Below the pieces are notes generated by a model, which worked only from the letters and a program-made list of their open reading frames with translations, was not told the origin of the DNA and did not search any database. A stretch of DNA of 64,000 bases. Origin: Octopus sinensis. Taxonomy: Eukaryota. The DNA is taken from NCBI RefSeq assembly GCF_006345805.1, contig NC_043003.1, forward strand, positions 96,038,001 through 96,102,000, written 5' to 3'. Positions 4,092 through 64,000 of the stretch are shown piece by piece. A program made the position numbers and the translations under genes. Position 1 is the first letter of the stretch. Every line of letters starts with the position of its first letter.

Positions 4092-4664
4092 ATATATATG
4101 ATGATGATGAAGATATATGATGATGAAGATGATGATGATGATGATGATGATGATGAAGATGATGATATATGATGGGCTTCTCTCAATTTCTGTATGCCAA
4201 ATCTACTCACAAGGCTTTGGTCTACCAGTGACTGAAATCAAAGACCCCTTCCCAAGGTGCTCTGCAATGGGACTGAATCTGAAACCAGATGGTTGGGAAA
4301 TCCGTTAATTTTATCCTTGGCTCCCCCTTTAGCTATTTGCTATTCACAAAAAGATAGCCTAAAGCATTGAAACATTTTTCTACTAGATTATGATGAGACA
4401 TTGTGTAATCCAAGTGTCCAAAGACTTAAACAACGATTTATATATGTGTAGAATGGGAGGGAAGAAAAAAGATAATTTAAATGTAAAACTGACAGATGTG
4501 CTGAAATTAATTAGTTGAAATTAATGAGTTACATTACCTGGAAGCAATTATTTATTGAAATATTCAAAGTAAAGTTTTTCTTTATTTGCAACAATATATA
4601 ATGATAATAAGATGTGATTAAAATTTAGTAAATGTATATATTTAGCCAAAATGTAGGCTCTATA

Positions 4665-5285
4665 TTGTGAAGTCTCATCATTGTCATCATCGTCATTGTT
4701 GTAGTCGTCATCGCTGTTATTGTCACTGTCATCATTTTCATCATTATCATCGTCATCGTCATCATCATCATTGTTGCTATCATCGTCGACGTCGTCGTCA
4801 TCATTGTTGCCATCATTGTCGACGTCGTCATCATCATCTTCGTCATCGTTGCCATCGTTGTTGTTGTCGTCGTTATCATCACCATCATCGTTGTCGTCAT
4901 CATCATCAACATCATTGTCGTCGTCATCATCTTCATCATTATCATCCTCATTGTCATCATTGTTGTTGTTGTGGTCGTCATCGGTGTTATTGTGGTCGTC
5001 ATTGTCATCATCATCATTGTTGACATCATCGTCGTTGTCATCATCATCAACATCATTGTCATCGTCATCATCCTCATCATTATCATCATCATTGTCATCA
5101 TCATCAACACCATCGTTGTCATCATTGTCATCGTTGTTGTTGTTGTTGTCGTTGTCATCATTGCCGTCATTGTTGTCGTCGTCATTATCCTCATCATCAT
5201 TGTCATCATCATCAATCATCATCAACACTATCGTTGTCATCGTCATCGTCGTTGTCATTGTCATTGTCATCATTGTTTTAATGTC
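4665..5285. repeat. Long degenerate (CAT/CGT/TGT)n triplet low-complexity tract
   Basis: Direct inspection; explains the Asp/Ser/His/Met-rich ORFs in several frames. Confidence 0.9.
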
Positions 5286-5784
5286 CACTTTCCTCTGCTT
5301 GTTTGGGTCAGACAAAGTTTGGTAAGGTAGAATTTCTGTAGCTGGATGCCCTTTCCATTGCCAATGCCATTCCTGTTGCTAAAAATCAACGGTGGCCGAA
5401 AAGAGGAACTCATGAATCATGTGACCAAAACCTAGCACAGATGTCTGATTAAATTTTGGGATATGATATCTTGTTCTTAGAACCTTTGTTCACCTAGTTG
5501 ACATGAATAAGTAACATACTTGGTACATAAACAGTCAGTAATACAATCAAATAAATGACTAATAGTTTTCTAGATGCAGGTGTGGTAAGAGGCTTGCATC
5601 CCAACTACGTGGTTTCAGGTTCTGTCCCCACTATGTCGTACCATGGGCAAGAATTTTCTACTATGGTCATAGCCCTTTGTGAGTAGATTTGGTACATGGA
5701 AACTGAAAGAAGTCTATTGTATGTATGTATGTGTATGTGTGTGTGTGTGTTGTGTGTGTGTGTGTGCGCGTGTGCATATACATA

Positions 5785-15969: not shown

Positions 15970-17762
15970 CCTTCGAAACATATGTCGAAAATAAAGGAAT
16001 TTTGTTAATTCGTCGTTCAGCTCCATTCGTCTTCTCACACATGGCATATTTCCAAAGGTCTCGGTCACTCGTCATTTCCTTGGTGAGGCCAAAAGTTCAA
16101 AGGTTGTGCTTCACCACTTCATCCCAGGTCTTCCTGGGTCTACCTCTTCCACAGGTTCCCTCAACTGCTAGGGTGTGGCACTTTTTCACACAGCTGCCCT
16201 CGTCCATTCTCGCCACATGACCATACCAGCGCAGTTGTCTCTGTTGCACACCACATCTGATGCTTCTTAGGTCTAACATTTCTCTCAAGGTACCTACACT
16301 CTGTCGAGTAAGTACACTGACATTACACATCCATCGGATCATACAGGCTTCATTCCTTGTGAGCTTACGCATGTCCTCAGCAGTCACAGCCCATGTTTCA
16401 CAGTCATGTAGCATGGCTGTTCATACACAAGCATCATACAGTCTACCTTTTACTCTGAGCAAGAGGCCCTTTGTCGCCAGCAGAGGTAGGAGCTCTCTGA
16501 ACTTTGCTCAAGCTATTCTTATTCTAGCAGCTACACTTTCAGCGCACCCTCCCCCACTACTGACTTGGTCACCTAGGTAACGGAAGCTGTCAACTACTTC
16601 TAGTTTTCCTCCCTGGAATGTGGCGGAAGTTGGTCTCTGTGCATTTTCAGTGTTTATTGCTCCCGAGCATCTGCCACATACAAAAACTTTCTTCCCCATT
16701 AGCCTCCCTTTGATATTACTGCACCTCTTATGTGTCCATAGCTTACACTGGGTGCATCTTATAGAGTTTCTATGTACGCCTCTACTACAGATTGAGCAGG
16801 GCCATCTACCTGAAGGGATTTGTGGTTTGCCTACCTTCCTACATATTAGGACTTCGGTTTTAGCTAGGTTGATTCTAAGGCCCTTCGATTCTAATCCTTG
16901 TTTCCACACTTGAAACTTCGCCTCTAGTTCTGATAGTGACTCAGTAATTAGAGGAAGGTCATCAGCATAGAGTAGTTCCCAGGGGCATCCTGTTTTGAAT
17001 TCCCCCCGTATTGCCTGGAGGACTATGATAAATAGGAGGGGGCTGAGGAGTGAACCTTGGTGGACTTCTACCTCTACCCTGAATTCTTCAGTGTACTCAT
17101 TGCCAACCCTCACCTTACTTACAGTGTCCCTGTACATGGCTCACACAGCTCTCACTAACCATTCATCTATCCCTAGTTTCCTCATTGACCACCAGATAAG
17201 GGATCGGGGGACCCTGTCAAAGGCTTTCTCCATGTCAACGAAAGCCAGGTACAGGGACTTATCTTTGGCTAGGTATTTCTCCTGCAGCTGTCTTACCAGA
17301 AATATGGCATCAGTGGTGCTTTTCCCTGGCATGAAACCAAACTGCATCTCATCCAAGCTGACTCTCTCCCTAATCAGTTGGGCTATGACCCTCTCCGTAA
17401 CCTTCATTACCTGATCCAACAGCTTGATACCTCTGTAATTATTTGTATCTACAGCATCACTTTTACCTTTGTAGCAGTTGACTATTATGCTGCTACACCA
17501 GTCATTGGGTATGACTCCTTCGTGTATCACCTGGTTAACTATACAGGTGACTAGGCTATAGCCGACACTGCCAGATATTTTGAGCATCTCTGCAGTAATT
17601 CTTGATAGGACTGGGGCTTTCCCTGTCTTCATTCTCTTAATTGTTTTATCTACCAGGTACTGTTAATTTGGATAGCTGTTGGGTCGACATTTGGCAGACT
17701 CTCATTCTCTCATTCATTTTCTTTATTCAGCAACCTTTCATAGTGGTGTCTCCAAACCTCTC
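15970..17762 (-). mobile_element. RTE-clade LINE, 5'-truncated; reverse transcriptase + PHD-like finger + C-terminal domain, disrupted
   Basis: ORFs 17141-17632, 16508-17137 and 16097-16414: NYRGIKLL, QFGFMPGKSTTDAIF, AFVDMEKAFDRVP, VHQGSLLSP, LLYADD, YLG, RLRWYGHVARM, GRGRPRKTW. Confidence 0.95.
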
Positions 17763-32267: not shown

Positions 32268-32298
<31 letters not shown>

Positions 32299-32830
32299 TT
32301 AACGTCCGTTTTCCATGCTAGCATGGGTTGGACGATTTTGACTGAGGGGAGGCAACCAGATGGCTGCACCAGGCTCCAGTCTTGATCTGGCAGAGTTTCT
32401 ACAGCTGGATGCCCTTCCTAACGCCAACCACTCCAAGAGTGTAATGGGTGCTTTTTACGTGCCACCTGCACAGGGGCCAGTCAGGCGGTACTGGCAATGA
32501 CCTCGCGTGAATCCTTTTACACGTGCCAGTGAAACGACATTGGTAACGATCACGCTCGAATGGTGCCCTTTTATGTGCCACGAGTATGGAAGCCAGTTGG
32601 CTGCTCTGGCAATGATCACGCTCGGATGGTGCTCTTGGCACCCTACTAGCACAGGCATAAGTGCCAGTAAGGCGACGCTGGTAACGATCATACTCGAATA
32701 GCCGTTCTGTCAACGATCACACTCGTATGGTGCTCTTTGCACCCCGCTAGCACAGATGCCAGTCATCGAAATGATTTTGATTTTGATTTTGATTTCACTT
32801 GCCTCAACAGGTCTTCGCAAGCAAAGTTTA
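32268..32830 (-). mobile_element. RTE 3' UTR/tail with expanded ~50-bp modules
   Basis: (CAT)n-TTTAACGTCCG tail, core, several GTGCCA..GGTGC modules, CTTGCCTCAACAGGTCTTCGCAAGC. Confidence 0.75.
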
Positions 32831-34385: not shown

Positions 34386-35530
34386 GAGGGAGCAACTACC
34401 TGAATTGACAGTAGCCTGGTAGATAAAGCAATTAAGGATATGAAGACAGGGAAAGCCCATCAGGAATCACTGCAGAAATGCTTAAAATATCTGGCTGTAT
34501 GGGTTCTGGTTTAGTCACCCGTATCATAAATCATGTAGTTCATGAAGGAGTCAAACCCAATGACTGGTGTAGCAGCACCATAGACAACTACTACAAAGGT
34601 AAAGGTGATGCTTTAGACAGAAATAACTACAGGGGTATCAAATTGCTGAATGAGTTGATGAAAGTTAAGGAGAGGGTCATAGCCTAACTAATTTGGGAGA
34701 GAGTCTGCTTAGATGAGATGTAGTTTGGTTCTGTGCCTGATAGAAGTATGGCTGATGCTATATTTCTAGTAAGGCAACTGCAGGATAAATACCTAGCCAA
34801 AGATAAACTTGGCTTTTGTTGACTTGGAGAAAGCCTTTGACAGGATCCCCTGATCCCTTATCTAGTGGTCATTGCAGAAACTTGGGTTAGACAAGTGGTT
34901 GGTAAAAGCTGTACAAGCCATGTATAGGGATGCTGTCAGTAAGGTGAGGGTCGACAACGAGTGTAGTGAAGAATTCTAGGTAGCAGTAGGGGTTCACCAA
35001 GGATTAGTCCTCAGCCCCATGTAATAAACCCCATTCGAGCGTGTTTTGATGCTAGTGCCGTCTGACTGGCTCCCATGCCGGTGGAATGTAAAAAGCACTA
35101 TGCGAATGTGGTCAATGCCAGTGCTCCCTGACTGGCTCCTGTACTGATGGCATGTAAAAGGCACCATATGAACGTGGTCGAGACCGCTGCACCCTGACTA
35201 GCTCCTGTGTTGGTGGCACACAAAATGCACCATCCAAATGTAGTCGATGCTAGTGCCCCTTGACTGGCTCCTGTGCTGGTGGCACATAAAAAATACCATC
35301 CATATGTGGTTGATACCAGTGCTGCCTGACTGGCTCCCATGCTGGAGGCACATAAAAAGCATCCACTATACTCTCAGAGTTGTTGACGTTTGAAAGGGCA
35401 TCCAACTGTAGAAATCTTGCCAGATCAGATTGGAGCCTGATGCAGCCTACTGGCTTTCCAGTCCTCAGTCAAACCATCCAACTTATGCCAGCATAGAAAA
35501 CAGGCATTAAACGACGACGACGATGATGAG
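34386..35530 (+). mobile_element. RTE LINE fragment: RT N-half joined by internal deletion to the 3' UTR/tail
   Basis: ORF 34478-34687 (NYRGIKLL); AFVDLEKAFD and VGVHQG motifs, then modules and tail. Confidence 0.8.
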
Positions 35531-35548
35531 GATTTAATGACCAGAGGC

Positions 35549-37396
35549 TAAAAAAATTTAATTGATCAGCCATTAAAAAAAGGGTGCCTAGCAAACTAAC
35601 AAACAAAGGTAAGTGTGGTCCTTTTTGAGATGAAAGATTTGGTTGCTATTTCTAGCTGGTCAAGAGAACGGCTCAAAATATCATGCAGTAATTAGTTACA
35701 GCCTTTACATTTTGACCAGAAATCCCATTATTGTCAACTCTGCAGTTTATCATTCCAGGAACATTAAAGCAAAGTATTGGGAAAAAAATGTACTTAATAC
35801 ACTCTGTGAAGTGAATTGTGTTAGGAAGGGTATCCAGTTGTAGAAATGAAACCCTAATGAAACTTACAAATAAGATGAGTGTGTGAAATATGGTATAGAC
35901 AGTCATGAGACCTAGCCTCAGAATCAAGTGGATTTGCAAAGGTTAGAGAGAAATGAGGCAAGCATTCTTCACTAAATGTGCAATGTCAGTATGCATAAAC
36001 AATATAATACCAATTATCTGAGAGAAAAAGCTGTATATAAGAGGAAATAGATATAGTTTGCTAAAGATACAGTTTGTTAATGTGGGAAAGAGGTGCATAT
36101 GGATGGTGACAACTGCAAAAGACATTGCCGAGTGCTCAAAGTCGATGGTGCCTGTAGAGGAGGAAGACATAGAATGAAGTGGTGAAAACTGATTTCAAGG
36201 CGCTTGAACCTTACAAAAGAGATTACAAGTAGGCTTAGGAGTGGCTGTGTGGTAAGTAGCTTGCTTACCAACCACATGGTTCCAGGTTCAGTCCCACAGC
36301 GTGGCACCTTGGGCAAGTGTCTTCTACTATAGCCTTGGGCCGACCAAAGCCTTGTGAGTGGTCGTTTTTCTTCTCGCACTAACTTAAGCTGCTCAAGCTG
36401 CTGGCAGTAGATCTCCTTTATTATCGTTTGGTTTGGGTTTAAAAGTTTAAACTGGACTAAACCTTTCATATCTCACCAAACAGATATCAGCACCTTATGT
36501 GGGTGAAGACCTTTTTTAGCCTGGGGTATCAGTGTTTCTCCTTTCCCTATCCACTGTCATCAGCGCTTGACATTTTTATAGAGATCCCATTTTTCCTCAC
36601 CAGTCACTATTCAGTCAAAACAAGGTTCATTCATGAGATGTGATAGCAAAGAAGAGCATAAATTCACTTGCTATGCATGATTAGACTCAGAAAGTTTGTG
36701 AGGAATCCATTGACCCAATTTGCTGACTTTTCCGATAACACATAGGTGTCAATGAATGGTTGAATGACCAAATCCAAGCTTCTCTGCTAGTTCTTCAACA
36801 GTTACAATGGGATTTTGCTCCACCAGGGTTTGCAGGACATCTTTGTAAAGCTCTACAGATCTTCCAGAATGAAGCTTGTCCTCTAGGCTGTAGTTTCCAG
36901 CTCATAATTTCTGGAACCACCATTGACATTGGCTTATGCTTATTGTCCTATCCCCATATACTGTATTAATATTCCTCACACTTTCTGTTGTGTTGTTGCC
37001 TTTATTGAACTCATAAAGCAAAATATGCTGGATGTGCACCTTTGTCATTTCTATTATAGTTTTGAAAAAATAAATGTTAAAATCAAACTGCATTAAGAAT
37101 AAGAAAGTAAAATTACCACCTGTTTTTATAGCAAGTTCACGCAGGCAGTTTATCCCTTCCCCTCTGACTTTTACTTCATGCAGTTGAAATAACTGCATTA
37201 TTTATGGGATGACCCAATGTATAGTACTGTGATCTACTTATATTAATTACAGTGGCACAAAGATAAAGCAGATAAAAGAGTGCTGGAAGGCTGAGCACTA
37301 AGGTGACAAATGGGAAAACAGGCGTAGATTAGATAGGGACATATTTGGTAAGTGACCCAGACATGGGCATACACATTATGCTTCCAGTCTTCATCA
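35549..37396. repeat. Left outer arm (A) of a large inverted duplication; partner 49169-51017
   Basis: Mirror ORF pairs (e.g. 36902-37198- / 49367-49663+, 36077-36469- / 50096-50488+) differ by only a few residues; endpoints align by eye. Confidence 0.95.
36365..37222 (-). mobile_element. Mariner 5' half (TIR + transposase N-terminal two-thirds), truncated by a SINE
   Basis: MTKVHIQHILLYEFNKGNNTTES.RNIN, WIPHKL, VTGEEKW, PHKVLISVW, QTIIKEIYCQQLEQL. Confidence 0.85.
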
Positions 37397-40300
37397 CGTC
37401 AGCTTTTATTTTGTATCAACAATTTTTTGCCTAGAGTTTTCATTGCCTACTTTTTCCTATATTTTTAAAAACACTTTTGGCCTACATTGTTTTATTAACT
37501 ATTTTTTGCCTATATTTTGTATCAACTGTTTTTCACCTATATTTTTCTCAACTATATTTTGCCTACATCTTTTCTCAACTATTGCTTGCCTACTTCTCAA
37601 CTAGTTTTTGCCTATAGTTTTGTCTATATTTTTGCCATTTCATAGAACATGAAAAATTAGGCAACCAAGTAGCAAACATAGTTGACAAAAAATATAGAGG
37701 CAAAAAATACATAAAACAATATACGCAAAAATAGTTGATAAAAATGTAGGCAAATATATATTACATTGGCAAAGTTCAGTTCATAAAACGATATAGGCTA
37801 AAACCATAAGCAAAAACTAATAGGCAAGAAAGAGTTCACATTTCATAAAAAATACCGGCATAACTATAGACAAAAATATAGGCAAAACTATAGGCAAAAA
37901 TCTAAAGGGTACTACATGCTAAAACTATAGGTGGCAAAACTATAACAGCAAAAAAATTGACTTAATATAGGCTGAAACTTCAGCCTATAGTTTTTGTCAC
38001 CTATAATTATCAACTATATTGTTTTATGATATAATATATATTTTCATCAGCTTGTCTATAGGTCTGCCAATAGTTTTTTAGTCTATAGTTTTTTGCCTAT
38101 AGACTATAAGTCTGCCTATAGCTTTGCCTATAGTTTTAGCCTATTTATTTATTAGTCCTACCTAATTTTAGCCTATAGTTTAGCCTATAGTTATGCCCAT
38201 ACTTTTCCTATAGATTAGCCTAGTTTTTACATCTATAGTTTTGTCGCCTATAGTTTTTCACCGAAATTTAGACTGTAGTTCTGTCTATAGTTTTAGCCTA
38301 TAGTTTGCCTATAGTTTTGTCACCTAAATTTAGACTATAGTTCTCTCTATAGTTTGCATAGTATTTTCAGCCTTTGCCTATAGTTGTTCACCTATACTCT
38401 TGTCGCCTATAGTTCTTCACCTATAATTAGTTTAGCCTAGTGTTGCCTATAGTTTTTTGGTCTATAGTAATTTTCTATATCTGCCTATAGTTCTGTCTAT
38501 ACTTTGTCTTATAGCAATTTCATCCTATAGTTTGCCGATAGTTTTTTAACTATATAGTTTTACCTATAGCTTTAGACTATAGTGCTGCCTATATTTTTAG
38601 CCTATAGTACATTCTGCCTATATTTTTAGCTATCATTTGCCTATCGTTTTTATCACCTAAAGTTTTGCGTATAGTTTTTGCCTATAGTTATTTATCAAAC
38701 GTGAACTTTTCTTCCCTATAGATTTTAGTCTATAGTTTGCCTAGACGGTTTCACGTATAGCTTCAGCCTATAGTTGGCTTTAGTTATTCATATATTATTT
38801 ATCAAAACTGAATTTTTCTTCCTTATATATTTTAGCCTATAGTTTTGCCTATATTTTTATCGAATGTGAATCTTCTTGCTTATATATTTTAGCCTATAGT
38901 TTTGCCTATAGCTTTTAGCATATAGTTTTTGTGATTTTTAGCCTATTTTTTATCAACTATATTGTTTTATGATATAATATATAATACTGTTTTATGAATT
39001 TTCGCCTATATTTTTATAGCCTTATATTTTCTTTCCTTATATTTTTAGCTCTATATTTTTTGTCAACCATGTCTGCTACTTGGTTACCTATTTTTTCATG
39101 AACTATTTTTTTGTCTATAATGTTTTATGAAATGGCAAAAAATATAGACAAAACTATAGGCAAAATGTAGTTGAGTAGGCAAACAACAGTTGAGAAAAGA
39201 CGTAGGCAAAATATAGTTGAGAAAAATATAGGCGAAAAACAGTTGATACAAAATATAGTTAATAAAACAACATCATCATCATCATCATCATCGTTTAACG
39301 TCCGTTCTCCATGCTAGCATGGGTTGGACGGTTCGACCGGGGATTGGGGAAGCCAGAAGGTGCACCAGGCTCCAGTCTTATCTGGCAATGTTTCTACAGC
39401 TGGATGCCCTTCCTAACGCCAACCACTCCGTGGGTGTAATGGGTGCTTTTTACGTGCCACCTGCACAGGTGCCAGGCGAGGCTGGCAACGTCCACGGTCG
39501 GATTGGTGCATTTTACATGCCACCAGCATGTAAGCCAGTCGAGGCGGCACTGGCACCGGCCACGATTCAGATGGTGCTTTTTACGTGCCACCAGCACGGA
39601 AGCCAGTCAAGGCGGCACTGGCATCGGCCACGATTCGGATAGTGCTTTTTACGTACCACCAGTTCAGGGGTCCTGGCATCTGCCGGGTGCCAGTCATAGG
39701 ATTGGTTCAATCTCGATTCCGAATTTGATTTCACTTGCCCCAACAGGTCTTCGCAAGCAAAGGGGGGTTGGCATGGGTGCCTGTCGTCGGATGAGGTTCT
39801 ATATCGACTTCGCTTGCCTCAACAGGTCTTTGTGTGTCCAAGGGAGGAAAGGCATGCATAAGTGGGCTGGACTCACTTGTCCTGCCTGGTCTTCTCATGC
39901 ACAGCATATTTCCAAAGGTCTTGGTCACTGGTCATTTCCTCAGTGAGGCCTAAAGTTCAAAGGTCGTGCTTCACCACCTCGCCCCAGGTTTTCCTGGGTC
40001 TACCTCTTCCACGGGTTCCCTCAACTGCTAGGGATTGGCACTTTTTCACATACCTATCTTCATCCATTCTTGCCACATGACCATACCAGCGCAGTCGTCT
40101 CTCTTGCACACCACAACTGATGCTTCTTAGGTCTAACATTTCTCTCAAGGTACTAACGCTCTGTCAAGTATGCACACTGACATTACACATCCATCGGAGC
40201 ATACTGGCTTCATTCCTCGCAAGCTTATGCATGTCCTCAGCAGTCACAGCCCATGTTTCACTGCCATGTAGCATGGCTGTTCGTACACAAGCGTCATACA

Positions 40301-40918
40301 GTCTGCCTTTTACTCTAAGCGAGAGGCCTTTAGTCACCAGCAGAGGTAAGAGCTCCCTGAACTTTGCCCAGGCTATACTTACTCTAGCAGTTATACTTTC
40401 AGCGCACCCACCCCCACTTCTGACTTGGTCACCTAGATAACGGAAGCTATCAACTACTTCTAGTTTTTCCCCCTGGAAAGTGACGGAAGTTGTTTTCTGC
40501 AGATTTTCAGAGTTTATTGCTCCGGAGCATCTGCCACATACAAAAACTATCTTCCCAGTTAGCCTTCCTTTGACATTGCTGCACCTCTTATGTGTCCATA
40601 GCTTACACTAGAGTTTCTACCTACACCTTTTCTACAGATCGAGCAGGGCCATCTTCCTGAAGACATTTGTGGTTTGTCTACCTTCCTACTTATTAGTACT
40701 TTGGTTTTAGCTAGGTTGACTCTAAGGCCCCTCGATTCTAATCCCTCCTTCCACACCTGGAACTTCTCCTCCAGTTCTGATAGTGACTCAGCAATTAGAG
40801 CAAGGTCGTCAGCATAGAGGAGCTCCCAGGTAGGCCAAAAATGTTTAAAAAAAATATAGGAAAAATAGGCAATTAAAACTCCAGGCAAAAAATTGTTGGT
40901 ACAAAATAAAGGCCGACG
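37397..40918. mobile_element. Foldback-like TIR element (X1) built of CTATAG sub-repeats, 8-bp TSD CTTCATCA, interrupted by an RTE
   Basis: Termini CGTCAGCTTTTATTTTGTATCAAC... / ...GTACAAAATAAAGGCCGACG are inverted; CTTCATCA(C) at 37389 and 40919; long internal arms are mutually inverted (e.g. 37489-37660 vs 39120-39270). Confidence 0.75.
39271..40829 (-). mobile_element. 5'-truncated RTE LINE with complete 3' UTR inserted in the right TIR of X1
   Basis: WELLYADDLAL..., RLRWYGHVARM, GRGRPRKTW, then UTR modules, core and (GAT)n; splits AATAAAACAA|GTAGGCC of the TIR. Confidence 0.9.
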
Positions 40919-41690
40919 CTTCATCACTTCATCCGAAAGCCTCTCTTGCAGATGTTTCACATAGCTGGTGGTTTCTCTCCTTCCCGGTAGTCTTCCCATC
41001 AACAGATCAACCGGGAGCCTTACTTCATGGCCCAATTCAGCATTGCAGGTGTATAGCCAGTACTCTCACGTGTCACCAAACGATAAGCGAGCAATAACGA
41101 AGGTAACTTCAAATCCCATTCCAACTGTCCTTCTACGCAATATTTGGCTAGTTCTTGTTCTAGTGTCCAGTTAAACCTTTCCACCCTCTCGTCCTACTGT
41201 GGTCTCATTGGGGTTGTTCTGGTCTTCTTAATCTCAACAGCTTACAGCACTCCTGGAACACAGCTGATACAAAGTTCCTACCTTGATCGGAATGCAACTC
41301 CTGGGGCACCCCGAACCGACAGAAGAACTGATTTACTAACACTTGTGCAACAGATGTGACTTCCTGATCACGGATGGCATAGGCCTCAGGCCACTTTGTG
41401 AAGTAGTCCATGGTCACACATATGTACTTATTTCCTCTTTCCGTGAGTGGCAACAGTCCAGCAATATCCACAGTTACCCTTTCCATGAGCAACCCATCTG
41501 GTATAACTGCAGAGGGGCACCATTCTTGGACGTCCTGACACAAGCCCATCCAATGGAATATGTGCTGCAGCTGATTCAACGTTTTCTTTATCCCCAGATG
41601 TCCACTTGTAATTTGGATGTGAGCTTCTTCCAGCAGCTCAGGTCTCATCTTCTTGGGTATCACCAACTGCCAGTTCACACTGTAGTTCTA
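40919..41690 (-). mobile_element. Gypsy/Ty3 integrase fragment
   Basis: ORF 41205-41678: AH..SGHLG..KT, VDIAGLLP, MDYFTKWPEAYA, FGVPQELHSDQGRNF. Confidence 0.9.
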
Positions 41691-42016
41691 ATGAAAACTT
41701 AGATATTTTTTGCAATTTCAAATATCAGAGTGACACTAATTCAGACCTGCATCAAATGTGTGCTCTTACATTGTGCATCTGCCAGGCTTTGTGTTTTGCT
41801 TAGCGTTAAAGATGTGCTAAAATCTTTCTTTGTCTTCTAATTTGGATTATATATTTTACTCTTTACTAAACCCACACAACGTTTTTATTGTTTTGACACC
41901 TGGATTTTCTACACCTGACTATAATCTGAGAATGCAGATAGCCTAAAGGTCAGGTTGAGCGCTATGTTGGAAATACCTCATCTTTCTACTCTCTCAGGAC
42001 CTTATATATATATGCA

Positions 42017-42065: not shown

Positions 42066-42572
42066 AATCAAATCAAATCAAATCAAAACAAATCAAATAG
42101 ATGAACATAAATGGAATTTGTATCTTTGTGGTACCAGTGCCGGTGGCACACAAGAAAATCATCCGAACGTGGCCGTAGCCAGTACCGCATAGACTGGCCT
42201 CCGTGCTTTGGGGACGTACAAACACCATCCGATCGTGGCCGTCCGCCAGCCTCATCTGGCACCTGTGTCGGTGGCACATAAAAACACCATCCGAGCCTGG
42301 CCGTCTGCCAGCCTCGTCTGGCACTGTGTCGGTGGCACATAAAAACACCATCCGAGCGTGGCCGTCGCCAGCCTGTCTGGCACCTGTGTCGGTGGCACAT
42401 AAAATCACCCACTACACTCTCGGAGTGGTTGGCGTTAGGAAGGGCATCCAGCTGTAGAAACACTGCCAGATCTGACTGGCCTGGTGCAGCCTTCGGGCTC
42501 CCCAGACCCCAGTTGAACCGTCCAACCCATGCTAGCATGGAAAACGGACGCTAAATGATGATGATGATGATG
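42065..42572 (+). mobile_element. RTE 3' UTR/tail with several tandem ~57-bp modules
   Basis: Repeated GGTGGCACATAAAAACACCATCCGAGCGTGGCCG units, then core and (GAT)n. Confidence 0.8.
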
Positions 42573-42710
42573 ATATATATATGTATATATATGTATATAT
42601 GCATGAATATATATGTATGTATATATATTTGGATTAATTATATATATATATTTGGATTAACTATATATATATATGAATTAACTATACATATATATATAAT
42701 ATAATATAAA

Positions 42711-43309: not shown

Positions 43310-43538
43310 TATGCCGGTGGCACGTAAAAAGCACCCACTACACTCACAGAGTGGTTAGTATTAGGAAGGGCATCCAGCTGTAGAACGACTGCCAGATCAG
43401 ACTGGAGCCTGGTATAGCCTTCTGGCTTCCCTGATCCCAGTCGAACCGTCCATCCTATTCTACCATGGAGAATGGACGTTAAACGATGATGATGATGATG
43501 ATGATATATATATATATGCATATATATATACATATATA

Positions 43539-46020: not shown

Positions 46021-46656
46021 TAGCCTATAGTTTTTGTCACCTATGGTTTTAGGCTATTGTTTATTTATAGTCCTGCCTATAGTTCTTCTGTCCATACATT
46101 GCCTATAGATTTAGTCTATAGTTTTGTCTTACAGGAATTTCAGCCTATAGTTTTTTCACCTATAGATTTTGTCACCTATAGTTTTACCTATAGCTTTAGA
46201 CTATAGTTCTGCCTATAGTAGTTTTAGCTATCGTTTACCTATAGTTTCTATCACCTAAAGCTTTGCCTATAGTTTTCCTATAGTTATCATTTATCAAACG
46301 TGAACTTTTCTTCCCTATAGATTTTAGCCTATAGTTTGCCTATATGGTTTCACGTATAGCTTAGTTATTCATATATTATTTATCAAAAGTGAACTTTTCT
46401 TCCTTATAGATTTTAGCCTATACTTTTGCCAATATTTTTATCGAATGTGAATCTTCTTGGTTACATATTTTAGCCTATAGTTTGGCCTATAGCTTTTAGC
46501 GTATAGTTTTATCGAATTTTAGCCTATTTTTTATCAACTATATTGTTCTATGATATAATATAATATATATTTTTATCAACTATTTTTGTGTATATTGTTT
46601 TATGAATTTTTGCCTATATTTTTATAGCCTTATATTTTCTTTCCTTATATTTTTTT
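46021..46656. mobile_element. Foldback element fragment X3 (internal/right-arm sequence)
   Basis: Direct match to ~38550-39050 (TTATCAAACGTGAACTTTTCTTCCCTATAG etc.). Confidence 0.75.
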
Positions 46657-47341
46657 ACATAGCTGGCAGTTTCTCTGGGCAGCTCCTCCTGCGGTGGTCT
46701 TCACATCAACAGATCAACCGGGAGCCTTACTTCATGGCCTATAGGCAGAAGGACTAAAAGGTGGGTGTGTTCATGGAAAGGGTAGCCGTGGATATTGCTG
46801 GACCGTTGCCACTCACGGAAAGAGGAAATAGGTACATATGTGTGACCAATGGACTACTTCACAAAGTGGCCTGAGGCCTATGCCATCCGTGATCAGGAAG
46901 CCACATCTGTTGCACAAGTGTTAGTAAATCAGTTCTTCTGTCGGTTCGGGGTGCCCCAGGAGTTGCATTCCGATCAAGGTAGGAACTTTGTATCAGCTGT
47001 GTTCCAGGAGTGCTGTAAGTTGTTGAGATTAAGAAGACCAGAACAACCCCAATGAGACCACAGTAGGGTGAGAGGATGGAAAGGTTTAACTGGACACTAG
47101 AACAAGAACTAGCCAAATATTGTGTAGAAGGACAGTTGGAATGGGATTTGAAGTTACCTTCATTATTGCTCGCTTATCGTTTGGTGACACATGAGAGTAC
47201 TGGCTATACACCTGCAATGCTGAATTGGGCCATGAAGTAAATCTCCTGGTTGACCTGTTGATGGGAAGACCACCGAGGGAGGAGAGAAACTGCCAGCTAT
47301 GTGAAACATTGCAAGAGAGGCTTTCGGATGAAGTGATGAAG
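46657..47341 (+). mobile_element. Second Gypsy integrase copy (46761-47341, +), preceded by a short inverted piece (46657-46740)
   Basis: ORF 46849-47055 nearly identical to part of 41205-41678; 46657-46740 matches 40959-41030 directly. Confidence 0.85.
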
Positions 47342-49168
47342 CGTCGGCTTTTATTTTGTATCAACAATTTTTTGCCTAGTTTTCATTGCCTATTTTTTCC
47401 TATATTTTTAAAAACATTTTTGGCCTACATTGTTTTATTAACTATTTTTAGCCTATATTTTGTATCAACTGTTTTTCGCCTATATTTTTCTCAACTATAT
47501 TTTGCCTACATCTTTTCTCAACTATTGCTTGCCTACTTCTCAACTAGTTTTTGCTTCTAGTTTTGTCTATATTTTTTACCATTTCATAGAACATGAAAAA
47601 TTAGGCAACCGTGTAGCAAACATAGTTGACAAAAAATATAGCGGCGAAAAATACATAAAACAATATACGCAAAAATAGTTGATAAAAATGTAGGCAAATA
47701 TATATTATATTGGCAAAGTTCAGTTCATAAAACAATATAGGCTAAAACCATAAGCAAAAACTATATGCTAAAAGCTATTGGCAACACTATAGGCAAAAAG
47801 GAGTTCACATTTCATAGAAAATACAGACATAACTATAGGCAAAAATATAGGCTAAAATCCAATAGGTGACAAAATTATAGCCGCAAAAATATTGGCAAAA
47901 TATAGGCTGAAACTAGAAGCAAAAACTATAGGCTGAAAGTATAGACAAATTATACCTGGCCTAGTTTTTGTCTCCTCTTGTTTGCCTATAGATATGTCTA
48001 TAATTTCAGCCTATTGTTTTTGTCACCTATAGTTTTGCTTATAGCTTGTCTATAGTTCTGCCTATAGTTTTTACCTAAACTTTGCCGTAGTAATTTCAAC
48101 CTATAGTTTGTGTATAGTTCTTATAGCTTTAGCCTATAGTTTTGCCTATAGATTTTAGTATCAACTGTTTTTCGCCTATATTTTTCTCAGCTATATTTTG
48201 CCTACATCTTTTCTCAATTGTTGCTTGCTTACTTCTCAACAACATTTTGCCTATAGTTTTGTCTATATTTTTTGCCATTTCATAAAACAATATGGACAAA
48301 AAATAGCTCATGAAAAAATAGACAACCAAGTAGCTGACATGGTTGACAAAAATATAGAGCTAAAAATATAAGGCTATAAAAATATAGGTGAAAATTCATA
48401 AAACAATATACGCAAAAATAGTTGATAAAAATATATATTATATCATAAAACAATATAGTTGATAAAAAATAGGCTAAAAATTGCAAAAACTATATGCTAA
48501 AATATATAAGCAAGAAGCTTCACATTCGATAAAAATATAGGCAAAACTATAGGCTAAAATCTACAAGGAAGAAAAGTTCACTTTTGATAAATAATATATG
48601 AATAGCTAAAGCCAACCGGCTTTTGTTATTCATATATTATTCATCAAAAGTGAACTTTTCTTCCTTGTAGATTTTAGCCCATAGGCTGAAGCTATACGCA
48701 AAACCGTATAGGCAAACTATAGGCTAAAATTTATAGTGAAGAAAAGTTCACGTTTGATAAATAATAACTTTAGGCTAAAACTATAGGCAGAACTATATAG
48801 TCTAAAGCTATAGGTGAAAAAACTATAGGCTAAAATTACTATAGACAAACTACAGGCGACAAAAACTATAGGCAGAATGTACTGTAGGCAAACTATAGGC
48901 AGAACTAGCCAAAATATAGGCGACATATAGGCTGAAATAACTATAAGACAAACTATAGGCAGGACAAACAATAGACTAAAGCTATAGGCGACAAAAACTA
49001 TAGGCAGACTATAGTTCTTTAGCCTATATAATTTGTCTTATAGTATTTCAGCCTATAATTTGTCTAGAGTTTTTTCACCTGCCTATAGTTTTTTCACCTA
49101 TAGTTTTTCTCTATAGTTTTTTCACCTATAGTGTTACCTATATTGACTGTTTTTAAAAATGGTGAGAG
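47342..49168. mobile_element. Foldback element copy X2, internally rearranged, one terminus eroded
   Basis: Starts CGTCGGCTTTTATTTTGTATC; TGATGAAG at 47334 and 49169; 47342-47850 is direct to the X1 left arm, 48150-49000 is inverse to the X1 right arm. Confidence 0.75.
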
Positions 49169-51017
49169 TGATGAAGACTGGAAGCATAATGTGTATGCCC
49201 ATGTCTGGGTCACTTACCAAATATGTCCCTATCTAATCTACGCCTGTTTTCCCATTTGTCACCTTAGTGCTCAGCCTTCCAGCACTCTTTTATCTGCTTT
49301 ATCTTTGTGCCACTGTAATTAATATAAGTAGATCACAGTACTATACATTGGGTCATCCCATAAATAATGCAGTTATTTCAACTGCATGAAGTAAAAGTCA
49401 GAGGGGAAGGGATAAACTGCCTGCGTGAACTTGCTATAAAAACAGGTGGTAATTTTACTTTCTTATTCTTAATGCAGTTTGATTTTAACATTTATTTTTT
49501 CAAAACTATAATAGAAATGACAAAGGTGCACATCCAGCATATTTTGCTTTATGAGTTCAATAAAGGCAACAACACAACAGAAAGTGCAAGGAATATTAAT
49601 ACAGTATATGGGGATAGGACAATAAGCATAAGCCAATGTCAATGGTGGTTCCAGAAATTATGAGCTGGAAACTACAGCCTAGAGGACAAGCTTCATTCTG
49701 GAAGATCTGTAGAGCTTTACAAAGATGTCCTGCAAACCCTGGTGGAGCAAAATCCCATTGTAACTGTTGAAGAACTAGCAGAGAAGCTTGGATTTGGTCA
49801 TTCAACCATTCATTGACACCTATGTGTCATCGGAAAAGTCAGCAAATTGGGTCAATGGATTCCTCACAAACTTTCTGAGTCTAATCATGCATAGCAAGTG
49901 AATTTATGCTCTTCTTTGCTATCACATCTCATGAATGAACCTTGTTTTGACTGAATAGTGACTGGTGAGGAAAAATGGGATCTCTATAAAAATGTCAAGC
50001 GCTGATGACAGTGGATAGGGAAAGGAGAAACACTGACAACCCAGGCTATAGAAGGTCTTCACCCACATAAGGTGCTGATATCTGTTTGGTGAGATATGAA
50101 AGGTTTAGTCTACTTTGAACTTTTAAACCCAAACCAAACGATAATAAAGGAGATCTACTGCCAGCAGCTTGAGCAGCTTAAGTTAGTGCAAGAAGAAAAA
50201 CGACCACTCACAAGGCTTTGGTCGGCCCAAGGCTATAGTAGAAGACACTTGCCCAAGGTGCCACGCAGTGGGACTGAACCTGGAACCATGTGGTTGGTAA
50301 GCAAGCTACTTACCACACAGCCACTCCTAAGCCTACTTGTAATCTCTTTTGTAAGGTTCAAGCGCCTTGAAATCAGTTTTCACCACTTCATTCTATGTCT
50401 TCCTCCTCTACAGGCACCATCGACTTTGAGCACTCAGCAATGTCTTATGCAGTTGTCACCATCCATATGCACCTCTTTCCCACATTAACAAACTGTATCT
50501 TTAGCAAACTATATCTATTTCCTCTTATATACAGCTTTTTCTCTCAGATAATTGGTATTATATTGTTTATGCATACTGACATTGCACATTTAGTGAAGAA
50601 TGCTTGCCTCATTTCTCTCTAACCTTTGCAAATCCACTTGATTCTGAGGCTAGGTCTCATGACTGTCTATACCATATTTCACACACTCATCTTATTTGTA
50701 AGTTTCATTAGGGTTTCATTTCTACAACTGGATACCCTTCCTAACACAATTCACTTCACAGAGTGTATTAAGTACATTTTTTTCCCAATACTTTGCTTTA
50801 ATGTTCCTGGAATGATAAACTGCAAAGTTGACAATAGCAGGATTTCTGGTCAAAATGTAAAGGCTGTAACTGATTACTGCATGATATTTTGAGCCGTTCT
50901 CTTCACCAGCTAGAAATAGCAACCAAATCTTTCATCTCAAAAAGGACCACATTTACCTTTGTTTGTTAGTTTGTTAAGCACCCTTTTTTTAATGGCTGAT
51001 CATTTAAATTTTTTTTA
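49169..51017. repeat. Right outer arm (A') of the inverted duplication (includes mariner 5' half ~49346-50205, +)
   Basis: Reverse complement of 35549-37396. Confidence 0.95.
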
Positions 51018-62583: not shown

Positions 62584-62908
62584 GAAGGTGCGTGGCTTAG
62601 TGGTTAGGGCATTCGGCTCACGATTGTAAGATCGTGAGTTCGATTCCAAGCGATGCGTTGTGTCCTTGAGCAAGACACTTTATTTCATGTTGCTCCAGTC
62701 CACTCAGCTAGCAAAAATGAGTTGTACCTGTATTTCAAAGGGCCGGCCTTGTCACACTGTGTGTCACGCTGAATCTCCCTGAGAACTACATTAAGGGTAC
62801 ACGTGTCTGTGGAGTGCTCAGCCACTTGCACGTTAATTTCTCGAGCAGGCTGTTCTGTTGATCGTATCAGCTGGGACCCTCATCGTCGTAACCGACAGAG
62901 TGCTCATA
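62584..62908 (+). mobile_element. tRNA-derived SINE family 4
   Basis: GGCTTAGTGGTTAGGGCATTCGGCTC..GAGTTCGATTCC head, TCCTTGAGCAAGACACTT core; partial copy at ~56780-56960. Confidence 0.75.
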
Positions 62909-62909
62909 T

Positions 62910-63164
62910 TTATATATATATATATATATACATACATACACACACACACACATACATACACTACATACATAAATACATATATACATACACACACATACAT
63001 AAACATACATATGTACACACACGCACATACACACATACACGCATGCAAAAATACATACATACACACATATGTACATACATACATACATACACACACACTT
63101 ACACACATACACACACATACATACATACGTACGTACATACATACATACACACACATACATACAC

Positions 63165-63201
<37 letters not shown>

Positions 63202-63640
63202 TACATACATACACACACATACATACACACATACACACACACATACACACATACATACATACACACACGCATACATATACATACATACACACACATACAC
63301 ACATACATACACACATATAAGCCCCTACATTGTACACACACGCACACATATATACATACATTCACTCGCACGCACGTACACACACACATTTACATATATA
63401 TATACTATACACTCACACACACATACACACGTACAAACACACACAAACTCACATACACACCGACAGATATACATACACAATATACACCTATCCGCGCATG
63501 CACACATACACACAAACACATACAAACGCACACATACACGCACACACATACACGTACATACATACACTCTCGTACAAATGAACTCACATATACATCCCTA
63601 CACACACACACACACGCACGTACAAGCACCCACGTACTAG
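62910..63640. repeat. Long compound (TA)/(CA)/(CATA)n microsatellite
   Basis: Direct inspection; source of the His/Thr- and Val/Cys-rich ORFs. Confidence 0.95.
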
Positions 63641-64000
63641 GTTAAACAGTTTCTTGCCACACACCCACACTCTACGCATACACACGAACACACACATGCA
63701 CACACACACACACTACAAACAACACACACACATGATACATATAGCCCTTTGTTTTTTGTTTTTTGACCCGGCTTTGACCTGGCTTGACACAAACAGCTAG
63801 TGGTCATCATCACAGCTGGCTTTGTCATTGCTTTTATTCACCAAAAATACACACACACACACACACACACACGCACAAACACACTTGTCATCTTGCACAC
63901 ACACACACACACACACACACAGGCATTCCTTTTTTTGGAACTCTCTTGCATTATAAAACCATATTTCAACTACCTTCAAATTCTGTTCTTTCAACATGTG

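What the first reader, a model, noticed from the sequence alone, without database searches (positions are those of the whole stretch)
37389..40926. Candidate new foldback-type transposon made of CTATAG sub-repeats (CGTC...GACG ends, 8-bp TSD)
Seen: after removing a nested RTE (39271-40829), a ~2-kb element remains that is essentially one imperfect palindrome. It has an outer T-rich domain, a middle domain, and arrays of a ~12-mer AAAACTATAGGC whose orientation switches near 37980. The ends are inverted (CGTCAGCTTTTATTTTG / CAAAATAAAGGCCGACG) and are flanked by CTTCATCA at 37389 and 40919. The repeat could be read as 9 bp, since it overlaps one TIR base. Removing the element restores a continuous flank. 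Established: long modular TIRs with 8-10 bp TSDs characterise Drosophila FB, Mutator/Phantom foldbacks and P-family Galileo. Inference: this is a non-autonomous cephalopod foldback family, with CTATAG cores as transposase binding sites. I do not recognise its CGTC terminus from common superfamilies.
Basis: partly seen in the sequence, partly recalled or inferred. Interest (0 to 1): 0.8.

Follow-up and report, generated by a model that had tools for sequence, protein, structure and literature searches.

The report
Foldback-type transposon in an octopus genome
A 2-kb non-coding DNA element built almost entirely of inverted arrays of a 12-base repeat sits in a dead retrovirus-like gene of an octopus genome with the signature of a cut-and-paste transposon insertion; it is a probable new family of a known kind, seen here at only one insertion site.

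Summary
Window 37397-40918 is a 1,963-bp imperfect palindrome, plus a nested 1,559-bp non-LTR retrotransposon fragment at 39271-40829. It has CGTC...GACG termini, about 580-bp modular inverted arms, a 16-nt centre palindrome at 37970-37985, dense GCCTATAGTTTT sub-repeats, and an exact 8-bp (possibly 9-bp) flanking direct repeat, CTTCATCA(C). It has no coding capacity. It lies in a Gypsy-type integrase pseudogene in an octopod genome.

These are not independent insertions. They lie in an inverted and partly rearranged segmental duplication of the same site (35550-41499 versus 46759-51015). Everything therefore traces to one insertion event. Dispersed paired ends with their own target-site duplications, which would define a family, could not be tested because no octopus assembly was searchable by DNA.

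My best reading is a non-autonomous foldback-type TIR transposon of unassigned superfamily. Mutator-like and Merlin both fit the duplication length, but the Merlin 5'-GG terminus is absent. The idea that CTATAG cores bind a transposase is untested. The "restored flank" is unproven, because integrase homology stops at the junction. Verdict: a new member of a known kind, of moderate to low interest.

The parts
37389..37396 (.). Left copy of the putative target-site duplication, CTTCATCA (9 bp if 37397 is included)
37397..37640 (+). Left arm, outer domain: CGTC terminus, T-rich, about 9 units of a 25-27-bp sub-repeat alternating TCAAC and GCCTA cores
   Evidence: (I1, I2, I7)
37641..37850 (+). 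Left arm, middle domain: A-rich and less repetitive, aligns with 38931-39124 in reverse complement
   Evidence: (I3)
37851..37969 (+). Left arm, inner array of 12-mers in the AAAACTATAGGC orientation
37970..37985 (.). Centre of the palindrome, GGCTGAA-AC-TTCAGCC, where the sub-repeat orientation switches
37986..38930 (+). Long inner array of GCCTATAGTTTT-type 12-mers (right-arm side, about 8 times longer than the left inner array), bracketed by a perfect 34-nt direct repeat at 38007-38040 and 38950-38983
   Evidence: (D6, D18)
38931..39270 (+). Right arm: middle domain and the inner part of the outer domain
   Evidence: (I1, I3, I7)
39271..40829 (-). Nested 5'-truncated non-LTR retrotransposon: RVT_1 domain, 68-bp tandem repeats, (CAT)7 tail at 39271-39292. 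It is absent from the left arm and from copy 2
40830..40918 (+). Right arm, terminal 89 bp ending ...GGCCGACG
   Evidence: (I2)
40919..40926 (.). Right copy of the putative target-site duplication, CTTCATCA (followed by C, then TTCATCC)
40919..41700 (-). Host sequence: Gypsy-type integrase pseudogene (Integrase_H2C2 plus rve domains). It reads ...YVKHLQERLSDEVMK up to the junction with the element
47342..49168 (+). Copy 2 at the same site in the inverted paralogue. The left terminus CGTCGGC is intact and there is no nested insert. The interior is rearranged, with two arms in the same orientation. The right terminus is missing, but GTGATGAAG and the flank beyond it are retained
46023..46654 (+). 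Copy 3: a fragment (array plus middle domain, 78% identical to 38405-39046), followed by 87 bp of integrase flank at 46653-46739
35550..37396 (.). Left flank, duplicated in inverted orientation at 51015-49168 (98.7% identity). It contains a mariner-like pseudogene

Best explanation
This is a non-autonomous, foldback-type class II (TIR, cut-and-paste) transposon that inserted once into the 3' part of a Gypsy-type integrase pseudogene in an octopod genome.

**Inferred mechanism.** A transposase encoded elsewhere recognises the CGTC termini. It probably also recognises the repeated sub-terminal motifs (GCCTA[T/C]A and TCAAC cores in 25-27-bp units, then 12-mers). It makes a staggered cut of 8 nt, or possibly 9 nt, at the target. 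Repair of that cut produced the CTTCATCA(C) duplication.

**Internal arrays.** The long arms are built from one sub-repeat family, which expands, contracts and recombines. This would explain the 8-fold asymmetry of the inner arrays and the different internal structure of the paralogous copies.

**Order of events after insertion.**
1. A roughly 4.4-kb block (mariner pseudogene, element and integrase) was duplicated in inverted orientation.
2. A non-LTR retrotransposon then landed in the right arm of copy 1.
3. Copy 2 was rearranged, and part of it flipped relative to its flanks.

**Shown versus inferred.**
- Shown: structure, termini, flanking duplication, absence of coding capacity, nested insert, duplication of the locus.
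- Inferred: transposition in trans, the binding-site role of the sub-repeats, the superfamily. The superfamily is unassigned. Mutator-like fits best on published precedent for foldbacks, and Merlin, hAT and P are not excluded by duplication length.
For: - **Arms.** The arms reach both ends, with identical CGTC/GACG tips. They are 94% identical over the outer 245 bp and 88% over about 500 bp.
- **Flanking repeat.** An exact 8-bp direct repeat abuts both tips. The 8-mer occurs about 10 times per 128 kb of both strands, so the chance of finding it at one given position is about 1e-4.
- **Domain architecture.** There are three domains (outer, middle, inner) and a spacer-less centre. This matches the published foldback scheme (PMC4079207).
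- **Sub-repeat enrichment.** The 12-mer occurs 74 times against 0.52 expected, and CTATAG is about 100-fold denser than in the rest of the window.
- **No coding capacity.** The longest ORF within copy 1 is 53 aa (up to 84 aa in copy 2), and no ORF tested gave a significant Pfam hit.
- **Host gene.** On the right flank the element abuts a recognisable integrase pseudogene, whose homology ends at the junction. The left flank is not recognisably integrase.
- **Age relative to the nested insert.** The RT-bearing insert is younger than the arm structure, because the left arm and copy 2 preserve its empty site.
- **Literature.** Foldbacks such as Tetris have 8-10-bp target-site duplications, are non-coding, and show many rearranged forms.
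Against: - **One insertion site only.** Copies 2 and 3 share copy 1's flanks.
- **No other copies found.** There is no other arm or terminus in the rest of the 64-kb window or in 21 kb of O. vulgaris DNA.
- **No empty site recovered**.
- **Left flank unidentified.** Integrase-profile homology ends at the junction and the left flank is not detectably integrase, so pre-insertion continuity of the flanks is unproven.
- **Tandem-like target.** The target region reads CTTCATCA-CTTCATCC, which slightly weakens the duplication argument.
- **No partner and no matching terminus.** No candidate autonomous partner is in the window. The CGTC terminus matches no superfamily motif that I could check: Merlin's 5'-GG and, from my own knowledge, hAT's YARNG.
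Confidence: 0.6

Rival explanations
1. This is a locally generated palindromic minisatellite, not a mobile element. A 12-bp repeat array expanded in situ and was turned into a palindrome by template switching or hairpin-primed repair. The flanking 8-mers would be residues of a pre-existing CTTCATC[A/C] tandem, or of microhomology-mediated repair.
For: - Only one site is known.
- The flank is tandem-like, reading CTTCATCA-CTTCATCC.
- The locus is demonstrably prone to inverted duplication and rearrangement.
- Integrase homology stops at the junction.
Against: - The outer 245 bp and the middle domains are not simple arrays. They are structured and largely unique sequences, mirrored at both ends, and they finish at identical CGTC tips that exactly abut the 8-mers.
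- A third CTTCATC unit would place stop codons in the integrase frame ...SDEVMK.
- The three-domain layout is the one published for foldback transposons.
Confidence: 0.15
2. The element is mobile, but its copies here and elsewhere spread mainly as a passenger. In this view the Gypsy-integrase-plus-foldback composite is the unit that multiplies, either by segmental duplication or by retrotransposition of a defective Gypsy that carries it. Alternatively, the element targets this integrase sequence specifically.
For: - Three copies of the integrase-foldback composite lie within 15 kb, at very different divergence.
- Flank substitution identity between copies 1 and 2 is 98.7% (left flank) and 96.2% (right flank). 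The copy 3 flank is 94% identical to copy 1 by substitutions, or 84% counting gaps.
- The copy 3 array is 78% identical to copy 1.
Against: - Copies 1 and 2 share sharp duplication boundaries outside any LTR-like structure. They also include a mariner pseudogene, which points to plain segmental duplication.
- Copy 3 has lost its junction, so an independent insertion cannot be assessed.
Confidence: 0.15
3. This is a Helentron/Helitron-associated element carrying tandem repeats, of the DINE-1/HINE type. Such elements are common in molluscs.
For: Tandem-repeat-bearing non-autonomous elements are frequent in molluscs (my own knowledge; the Pearl family is cited in the reference list of PMC4079207).
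Against: - From my own knowledge, those elements have short sub-terminal inverted repeats, no target-site duplication, and insert at T-T.
- Here the arms are about 580 bp, reach both tips, and are flanked by an 8-bp duplication in a non-TT context.
Confidence: 0.03
4. This is an assembly artefact: palindromic chimeric long reads or collapsed haplotypes.
For: Palindromes and a nearby 98.7% identical inverted duplication are classic artefact shapes.
Against: - The arms differ by 6-12% plus several indels of 11-28 bp.
- One arm carries a 1.56-kb retrotransposon that the other lacks.
- The paralogues differ by 1.3-4% and by large rearrangements.
Confidence: 0.03

Closest known systems
Foldback elements as a structural class (Drosophila FB, sea-urchin TU, Chironomus TFB1, D. 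virilis Tetris; described in PMC4079207)
   Same: - Very long inverted arms make up nearly the whole element.
- The arms are modular, with outer, middle and inner domains built from tandem sub-repeats.
- There is no coding capacity.
- The target-site duplication is 8-10 bp.
- Rearranged forms are common.
   Different: - There is no sequence relationship that I could test.
- The sub-repeat here is a 12-mer with a palindromic CTATAG core, and the terminus is CGTC.
- Only one insertion site is documented, whereas those families were defined from many copies.
Mutator-like elements with long TIRs (Phantom/Muta, Spectre, Tm1; PMC6446971, PMC3169594)
   Same: - The 8-11-bp target-site duplication range includes 8 and 9.
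- TIRs are hundreds of bp long.
- Most described foldbacks are assigned to this superfamily.
- MULEs occur in Mollusca.
   Different: No MULE transposase is linked to this element, and no terminus could be compared. The assignment would rest on duplication length and precedent only.
Merlin superfamily (PMC8101967)
   Same: - The 8- or 9-bp target-site duplication matches the ambiguity seen here exactly.
- TIRs reach up to 462 bp, and some families have imperfect TIRs and internal tandem repeats.
- Merlin is unusually abundant in Octopus bimaculoides, with 191 sequences.
   Different: The conserved terminal 5'-GG is absent, since the element starts with CG. No DDE_Tnp_IS1595 ORF is in or near the element.
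Galileo (P superfamily foldback of Drosophila buzzatii; as cited in PMC4079207)
   Same: It is foldback-like, with tandem repeats inside the TIRs that carry secondary transposase (THAP) binding sites.
   Different: From my own knowledge, Galileo has a 7-bp target-site duplication and different termini. Autonomous Galileo copies encode a P-like transposase, and none is seen here.

Membership tests
Foldback-type TIR elements (structural class) | Inverted arms occupy most of the element and reach both termini | tested here: met
   Arms run 37397-~37975 and ~38700-40918 (minus the insert). Identity is 94% over the outer 245 bp and 88% over ~500 bp
Foldback-type TIR elements (structural class) | Arms are modular and built of tandem sub-repeats | tested here: met
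   The outer domain has 25-27-bp units and the inner arrays have 12-bp units. The 12-mer occurs 74 times against 0.52 expected
Foldback-type TIR elements (structural class) | Target-site duplication of constant length flanking the termini | tested here: met
   CTTCATCA(C) is exact at 37389 and 40919. This is a single event, and the length is ambiguous between 8 and 9 bp
Foldback-type TIR elements (structural class) | Multiple dispersed copies at unrelated sites, each with its own duplication (evidence of mobility) | tested here: inconclusive
   All three copies share one site through segmental duplication. None was found in the rest of the window or in L001. Pattern scans and a pseudo-ORF protein search found no relative; the few 20-mer matches were chance. 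No octopus assembly could be searched by DNA
Mutator superfamily | Target-site duplication of 8-11 bp | tested here: met
   8 or 9 bp. The range is taken from PMC6446971. This feature is compatible but not specific
Mutator superfamily | Related autonomous copy encoding a MULE DDE transposase | not testable with these tools
   No transposase is in the element and none in the window apart from mariner. Genome-wide copies are unavailable
Merlin superfamily | Target-site duplication of 8-9 bp | tested here: met
   The definition is from PMC8101967
Merlin superfamily | Conserved terminal 5'-GG-3' | tested here: not met
   Both termini read 5'-CGTC
hAT superfamily | 8-bp duplication plus a terminal YARNG-type motif (motif recalled from my own knowledge) | tested here: not met
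   An 8-bp duplication is possible, but the terminus is CGTCAG/CGTCGG, not CAG/TAG at position 1
P superfamily / Galileo | 7-8-bp duplication and THAP-domain transposase binding sites in the TIR | not testable with these tools
   Duplication length is compatible if 8 bp. No transposase or binding data are available
Helentron-associated tandem-repeat elements (DINE-1/HINE-like) | No target-site duplication, insertion at T-T, short sub-terminal inverted repeats (from my own knowledge) | tested here: not met
   There is an 8-bp duplication, about 580-bp arms that reach the tips, and the insertion is not between T and T

The most novel reading that the evidence does not exclude
The element could represent a cephalopod-specific foldback lineage whose CGTC terminus and CTATAG-core 12-mer arrays belong to a transposase clade not yet linked to foldbacks, for example a Merlin-derived or wholly new group. 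Its long inverted arms might also actively drive local inverted duplications and in-place flipping. That would fit the arm swap between the two paralogues and the one-ended loss of a terminus with the flank kept exactly.
Probability: 0.12. Interest if true: 0.6.

Novelty: new member of a known kind. Interest (0 to 1): 0.3.

Why it matters
- **Gap in the literature.** In the searchable literature I found no description of foldback elements in cephalopods. Octopus genomes are unusually repeat-rich and rearranged.
- **What a verified family would offer.** It would add a marker for structural instability, since foldbacks are implicated elsewhere in inversions and in seeding satellites (PMC4079207). 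It would also give a handle for identifying the responsible transposase.
- **What this locus adds.** It holds three differently rearranged derivatives of one insertion. That is a small natural experiment on how long inverted repeats evolve.
- **Limits.** It remains one more TE family of a known architecture, and it does not open a new biological question by itself.

Tried and rejected
1. **Pseudo-protein search.** I translated a stop-free frame of the TIR to fish spurious ORFs from other assemblies. No hit.
2. **Metagenome scans.** I scanned with the terminal 24-mer and with the 27-mer conserved in all four arms. Both returned 0 matches.
3. **Scans of prokaryotic genomes and viral contigs with the 12-mer dimer.** These gave only isolated chance 20-mers with no arrays.
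4. **Exact-protein look-up of a window ORF, to locate the source contig.** Not on record.
5. **Reaching octopus DNA through the best RT homologue.** This gave one 20.9-kb O. vulgaris locus with the same RTE/SINE families but no foldback copy.
6. **Testing flank continuity through integrase homologues.**
   - tblastn of 6 homologues against a reconstructed empty site found no HSP crossing the junction.
   - A low-stringency tblastn of 120 homologues gave only a weak match, DW-KHNVYAHVWV, at E 0.02 per query.
   - A 34-sequence profile HMM stops at position 214-215 of 313 and finds nothing in the left flank.
   - I therefore rejected my initial impression that the EVMKT/HVW motifs prove continuity.
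7. **Empty-site search in the window.** None found.
8. **Rfam and tRNA scans of the window.** Nothing found.
9. **Literature search for the motif itself.** It returned only unrelated primers.
10. **Single-strand DNA folding of 37397-38600.** Not informative beyond the repeat analysis.
11. **Pfam scans.** The scan of 138 window ORFs looking for a partner transposase found only mariner, RT/PHD and integrase domains. A separate scan of 8 ORFs from within the three copies gave no significant hit.

Full report
**Observation**

- The element starts with CGTCAGCTTTTATTTTG at 37397 and ends with CAAAATAAAGGCCGACG at 40918.
- CTTCATCA lies immediately outside both ends, at 37389-37396 and 40919-40926. 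The next base is C on both sides, so the repeat can be read as 9 bp at the cost of a one-base offset in the terminal inverted repeat.
- This 8-mer occurs 10 times on both strands of the window. Four of those are the flanks of the two full copies. A chance match at one defined position has a probability of about 1e-4.
- One caveat is that the right flank reads CTTCATCA-CTTCATCC, so the target is itself tandem-like.

**Anatomy**

After removing 39271-40829 the element is 1,963 bp.
- A global alignment with its own reverse complement, the repeat finder and pairwise arm comparisons give 94% substitution identity over the outer 245 bp. Identity is 88% over about 500 bp, with indels of 11, 22 and 28 bp.
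- A polarity map shows four blocks:
  - a T-rich outer domain at 37397-37640;
  - an A-rich middle domain and short inner array at 37640-37969;
  - a 16-nt centre palindrome, GGCTGAA-AC-TTCAGCC, at 37970-37985;
  - a long T-rich array and middle domain at 37986-39110, followed by the A-rich outer domain at 39110-39270 plus 40830-40918.
- The outer domain consists of about 9 units of 25-27 bp that alternate TCAAC and GCCTA cores. The inner arrays are 12-mers of the GCCTATAGTTTT type.
- The 12-mer (at most 1 mismatch) occurs 74 times against 0.52 expected. CTATAG is 15-27 per kb inside the copies and 0.21 per kb elsewhere.
- The inner arrays are strongly asymmetric, about 120 bp on the left and about 950 bp on the right.
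- The longest ORF within copy 1 is 53 aa (up to 84 aa in copy 2), and no ORF tested from the three copies has a significant Pfam match.

**Nested insert**

- The stretch 39271-40829 carries an RVT_1 domain on the minus strand, a 68-bp tandem repeat and a (CAT)7 tail. It is 87.6% identical to another copy at 16029-16983.
- The uninterrupted left arm and copy 2 both read GGCCTACATTGTTTTATT across its insertion point. The insert is therefore secondary, made no target duplication, and removed one base.
- I did not verify that it belongs to the RTE clade specifically.

**Host and species**

- The right flank is a Gypsy-type integrase pseudogene on the minus strand (Integrase_H2C2 plus rve domains). 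Its best homologues are 64% identical proteins from decapod crustaceans.
- The left flank contains a mariner-like pseudogene (HTH_48 and Transposase_1).
- The window's RT ORFs are 79% identical to an Octopus vulgaris protein. The O. vulgaris locus encoding that protein shares the window's RTE/SINE families at 74-89% nucleotide identity.

- The terminus 19-mer occurs a third time at 47342, and sub-repeat arrays fill 46023-46654 and 47342-49150.
- Self-BLAST shows that 35550-37397 matches 51015-49168 at 98.7% identity, and 40830-41499 matches 47428-46759 at 94.8%. Both matches are inverted.
- Copy 2 (47342-49168) therefore sits at the same insertion site in an inverted segmental duplication. It is not an independent insertion.
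- Copy 3 (46023-46654, 78% identical to 38405-39046) is followed by 87 bp of the same integrase flank, but it has lost the junction.
- An nhmmer profile of the four arms finds nothing else in the window or in the O. vulgaris locus.
- All the evidence for mobility thus comes from one event.

**Rearrangement of the paralogues**

- The arm of copy 2 that abuts the integrase flank is of the copy-1 left-arm type. It is 95.9% identical to that arm and shares all its indel states, but it is only 89.6% identical to the positionally equivalent right arm.
- The right-arm-type sequence of copy 2 (48140-48616) is internal and points the same way as the arm at 47342.
- Copy 2 lacks the last ~57 or more nucleotides of its other terminus, yet it keeps GTGATGAAG and the flank beyond it exactly.
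- Recombination between inverted arms or sub-repeats would explain a flip relative to the flanks. I could not derive the full structure from a single event, so I leave it as unexplained.
- The order of events is: insertion of the element, then duplication, then the RT insertion into copy 1 and the rearrangement of copy 2.

**Was the flank continuous?**

- On the right flank the integrase reads ...YVKHLQERLSDEVMK up to the element.
- tblastn of six homologues against a reconstructed empty site gives no HSP that crosses the junction.
- A profile HMM built from 34 homologues aligns up to position 214-215 of 313 and finds nothing in the left flank.
- A low-stringency tblastn of 120 homologues gives one suggestive match, DW-KHNVYAHVWV against DWHSREVKYNVGDHVWL. 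Its E-value of 0.02 per query is at noise level.
- No empty site exists in the window.
- Continuity is therefore plausible but unproven.

**Interpretation**

- Long modular arms that reach identical tips, an exact 8/9-bp flanking duplication and the absence of coding capacity match the published description of foldback transposons. Tetris is an example: an 8-10-bp target-site duplication, non-autonomous, and many rearranged forms (PMC4079207).
- That paper also states that most foldbacks are assigned to Mutator, with Galileo (P superfamily) as an exception.
- MULE target-site duplications are 8-11 bp, and MULEs occur in molluscs (PMC6446971).
- Merlin elements have 8-9-bp duplications, sometimes carry internal tandem repeats, and are strikingly abundant in O. 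bimaculoides. However, they have a conserved 5'-GG terminus that is absent here (PMC8101967).
- No transposase other than mariner is encoded in the window.
- I therefore file the element as a non-autonomous foldback-type TIR element of unassigned superfamily.
- The idea that the CTATAG-core repeats are transposase binding sites has a precedent in Galileo, but it is untested here.

**Searches elsewhere**

- The pseudo-ORF protein search, two metagenome scans, and one genome scan and two viral scans gave nothing beyond chance 20-mers.
- Literature searches for foldback or fold-back together with octopus or cephalopod found nothing relevant.
- No eukaryotic assembly, Dfam or Repbase could be queried by DNA, so I could not test whether the family is uncatalogued.

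**Verdict**

- It is most likely a new family of a known kind.
- Interest is moderate to low unless genome-wide copies reveal an unexpected transposase.

Noticed in passing
35550-41499 versus 46759-51015: An inverted segmental duplication with a 5.3-kb spacer. Left-flank identity is 98.7% and right-flank identity 96%. The outer boundary is sharp and falls at an A7 run, AAAAAAATTTAA.
   Followed up: partly
47342-47860 and 48140-48616: In copy 2 the arm next to the integrase flank is of the copy-1 left-arm type. The right-arm-type sequence is internal and points the same way. The element, or about 800 bp of it, is therefore flipped relative to its flanks in one paralogue.
   Followed up: partly
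49130-49176: The right end of copy 2 lacks the terminal ~57 or more nucleotides of the TIR and has GGTGAGA in their place. GTGATGAAG and the flank beyond it are kept exactly, as in a one-ended deletion.
   Followed up: no
46653-46760: A head-to-head junction. An 87-bp minus-sense integrase fragment attached to copy 3 abuts the plus-sense integrase of copy 2 at about 46739/46740.
   Followed up: partly
38007-38040 and 38950-38983: A perfect 34-nt direct repeat, TTATCAACTATATTGTTTTATGATATAATATATA, brackets the long inner array of copy 1. The proximal copy has no counterpart in copy 2, which suggests a recent conversion or duplication.
   Followed up: no
35950-37200 and 49364-50620: A mariner-like transposase pseudogene (HTH_48 plus a partial DDE domain) lies in the duplicated left flank. 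No inverted terminal repeats of at least 18 nt were found.
   Followed up: partly
39275-39660; also 572-805, 32272-32636, 35100-35533, 42076-42574, 43312-43505: The 3' ~400 bp of the nested retrotransposon, with 68-bp tandem repeats and a trinucleotide tail, recurs as many short SINE-like copies in the window and in the O. vulgaris locus.
   Followed up: no
protein P0122: A protein labelled as coming from a Herbaspirillum MAG is 71% identical to this octopus-type RT-PHD retrotransposon ORF. It sits on a 1.5-kb contig, which probably reflects animal DNA contamination of the MAG.
   Followed up: no
4548-5330, 62800-63650 and many other places: Long microsatellite or low-complexity tracts generate spurious ORFs of 150-280 aa. 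No Rfam family or tRNA was found in the whole window.
   Followed up: no
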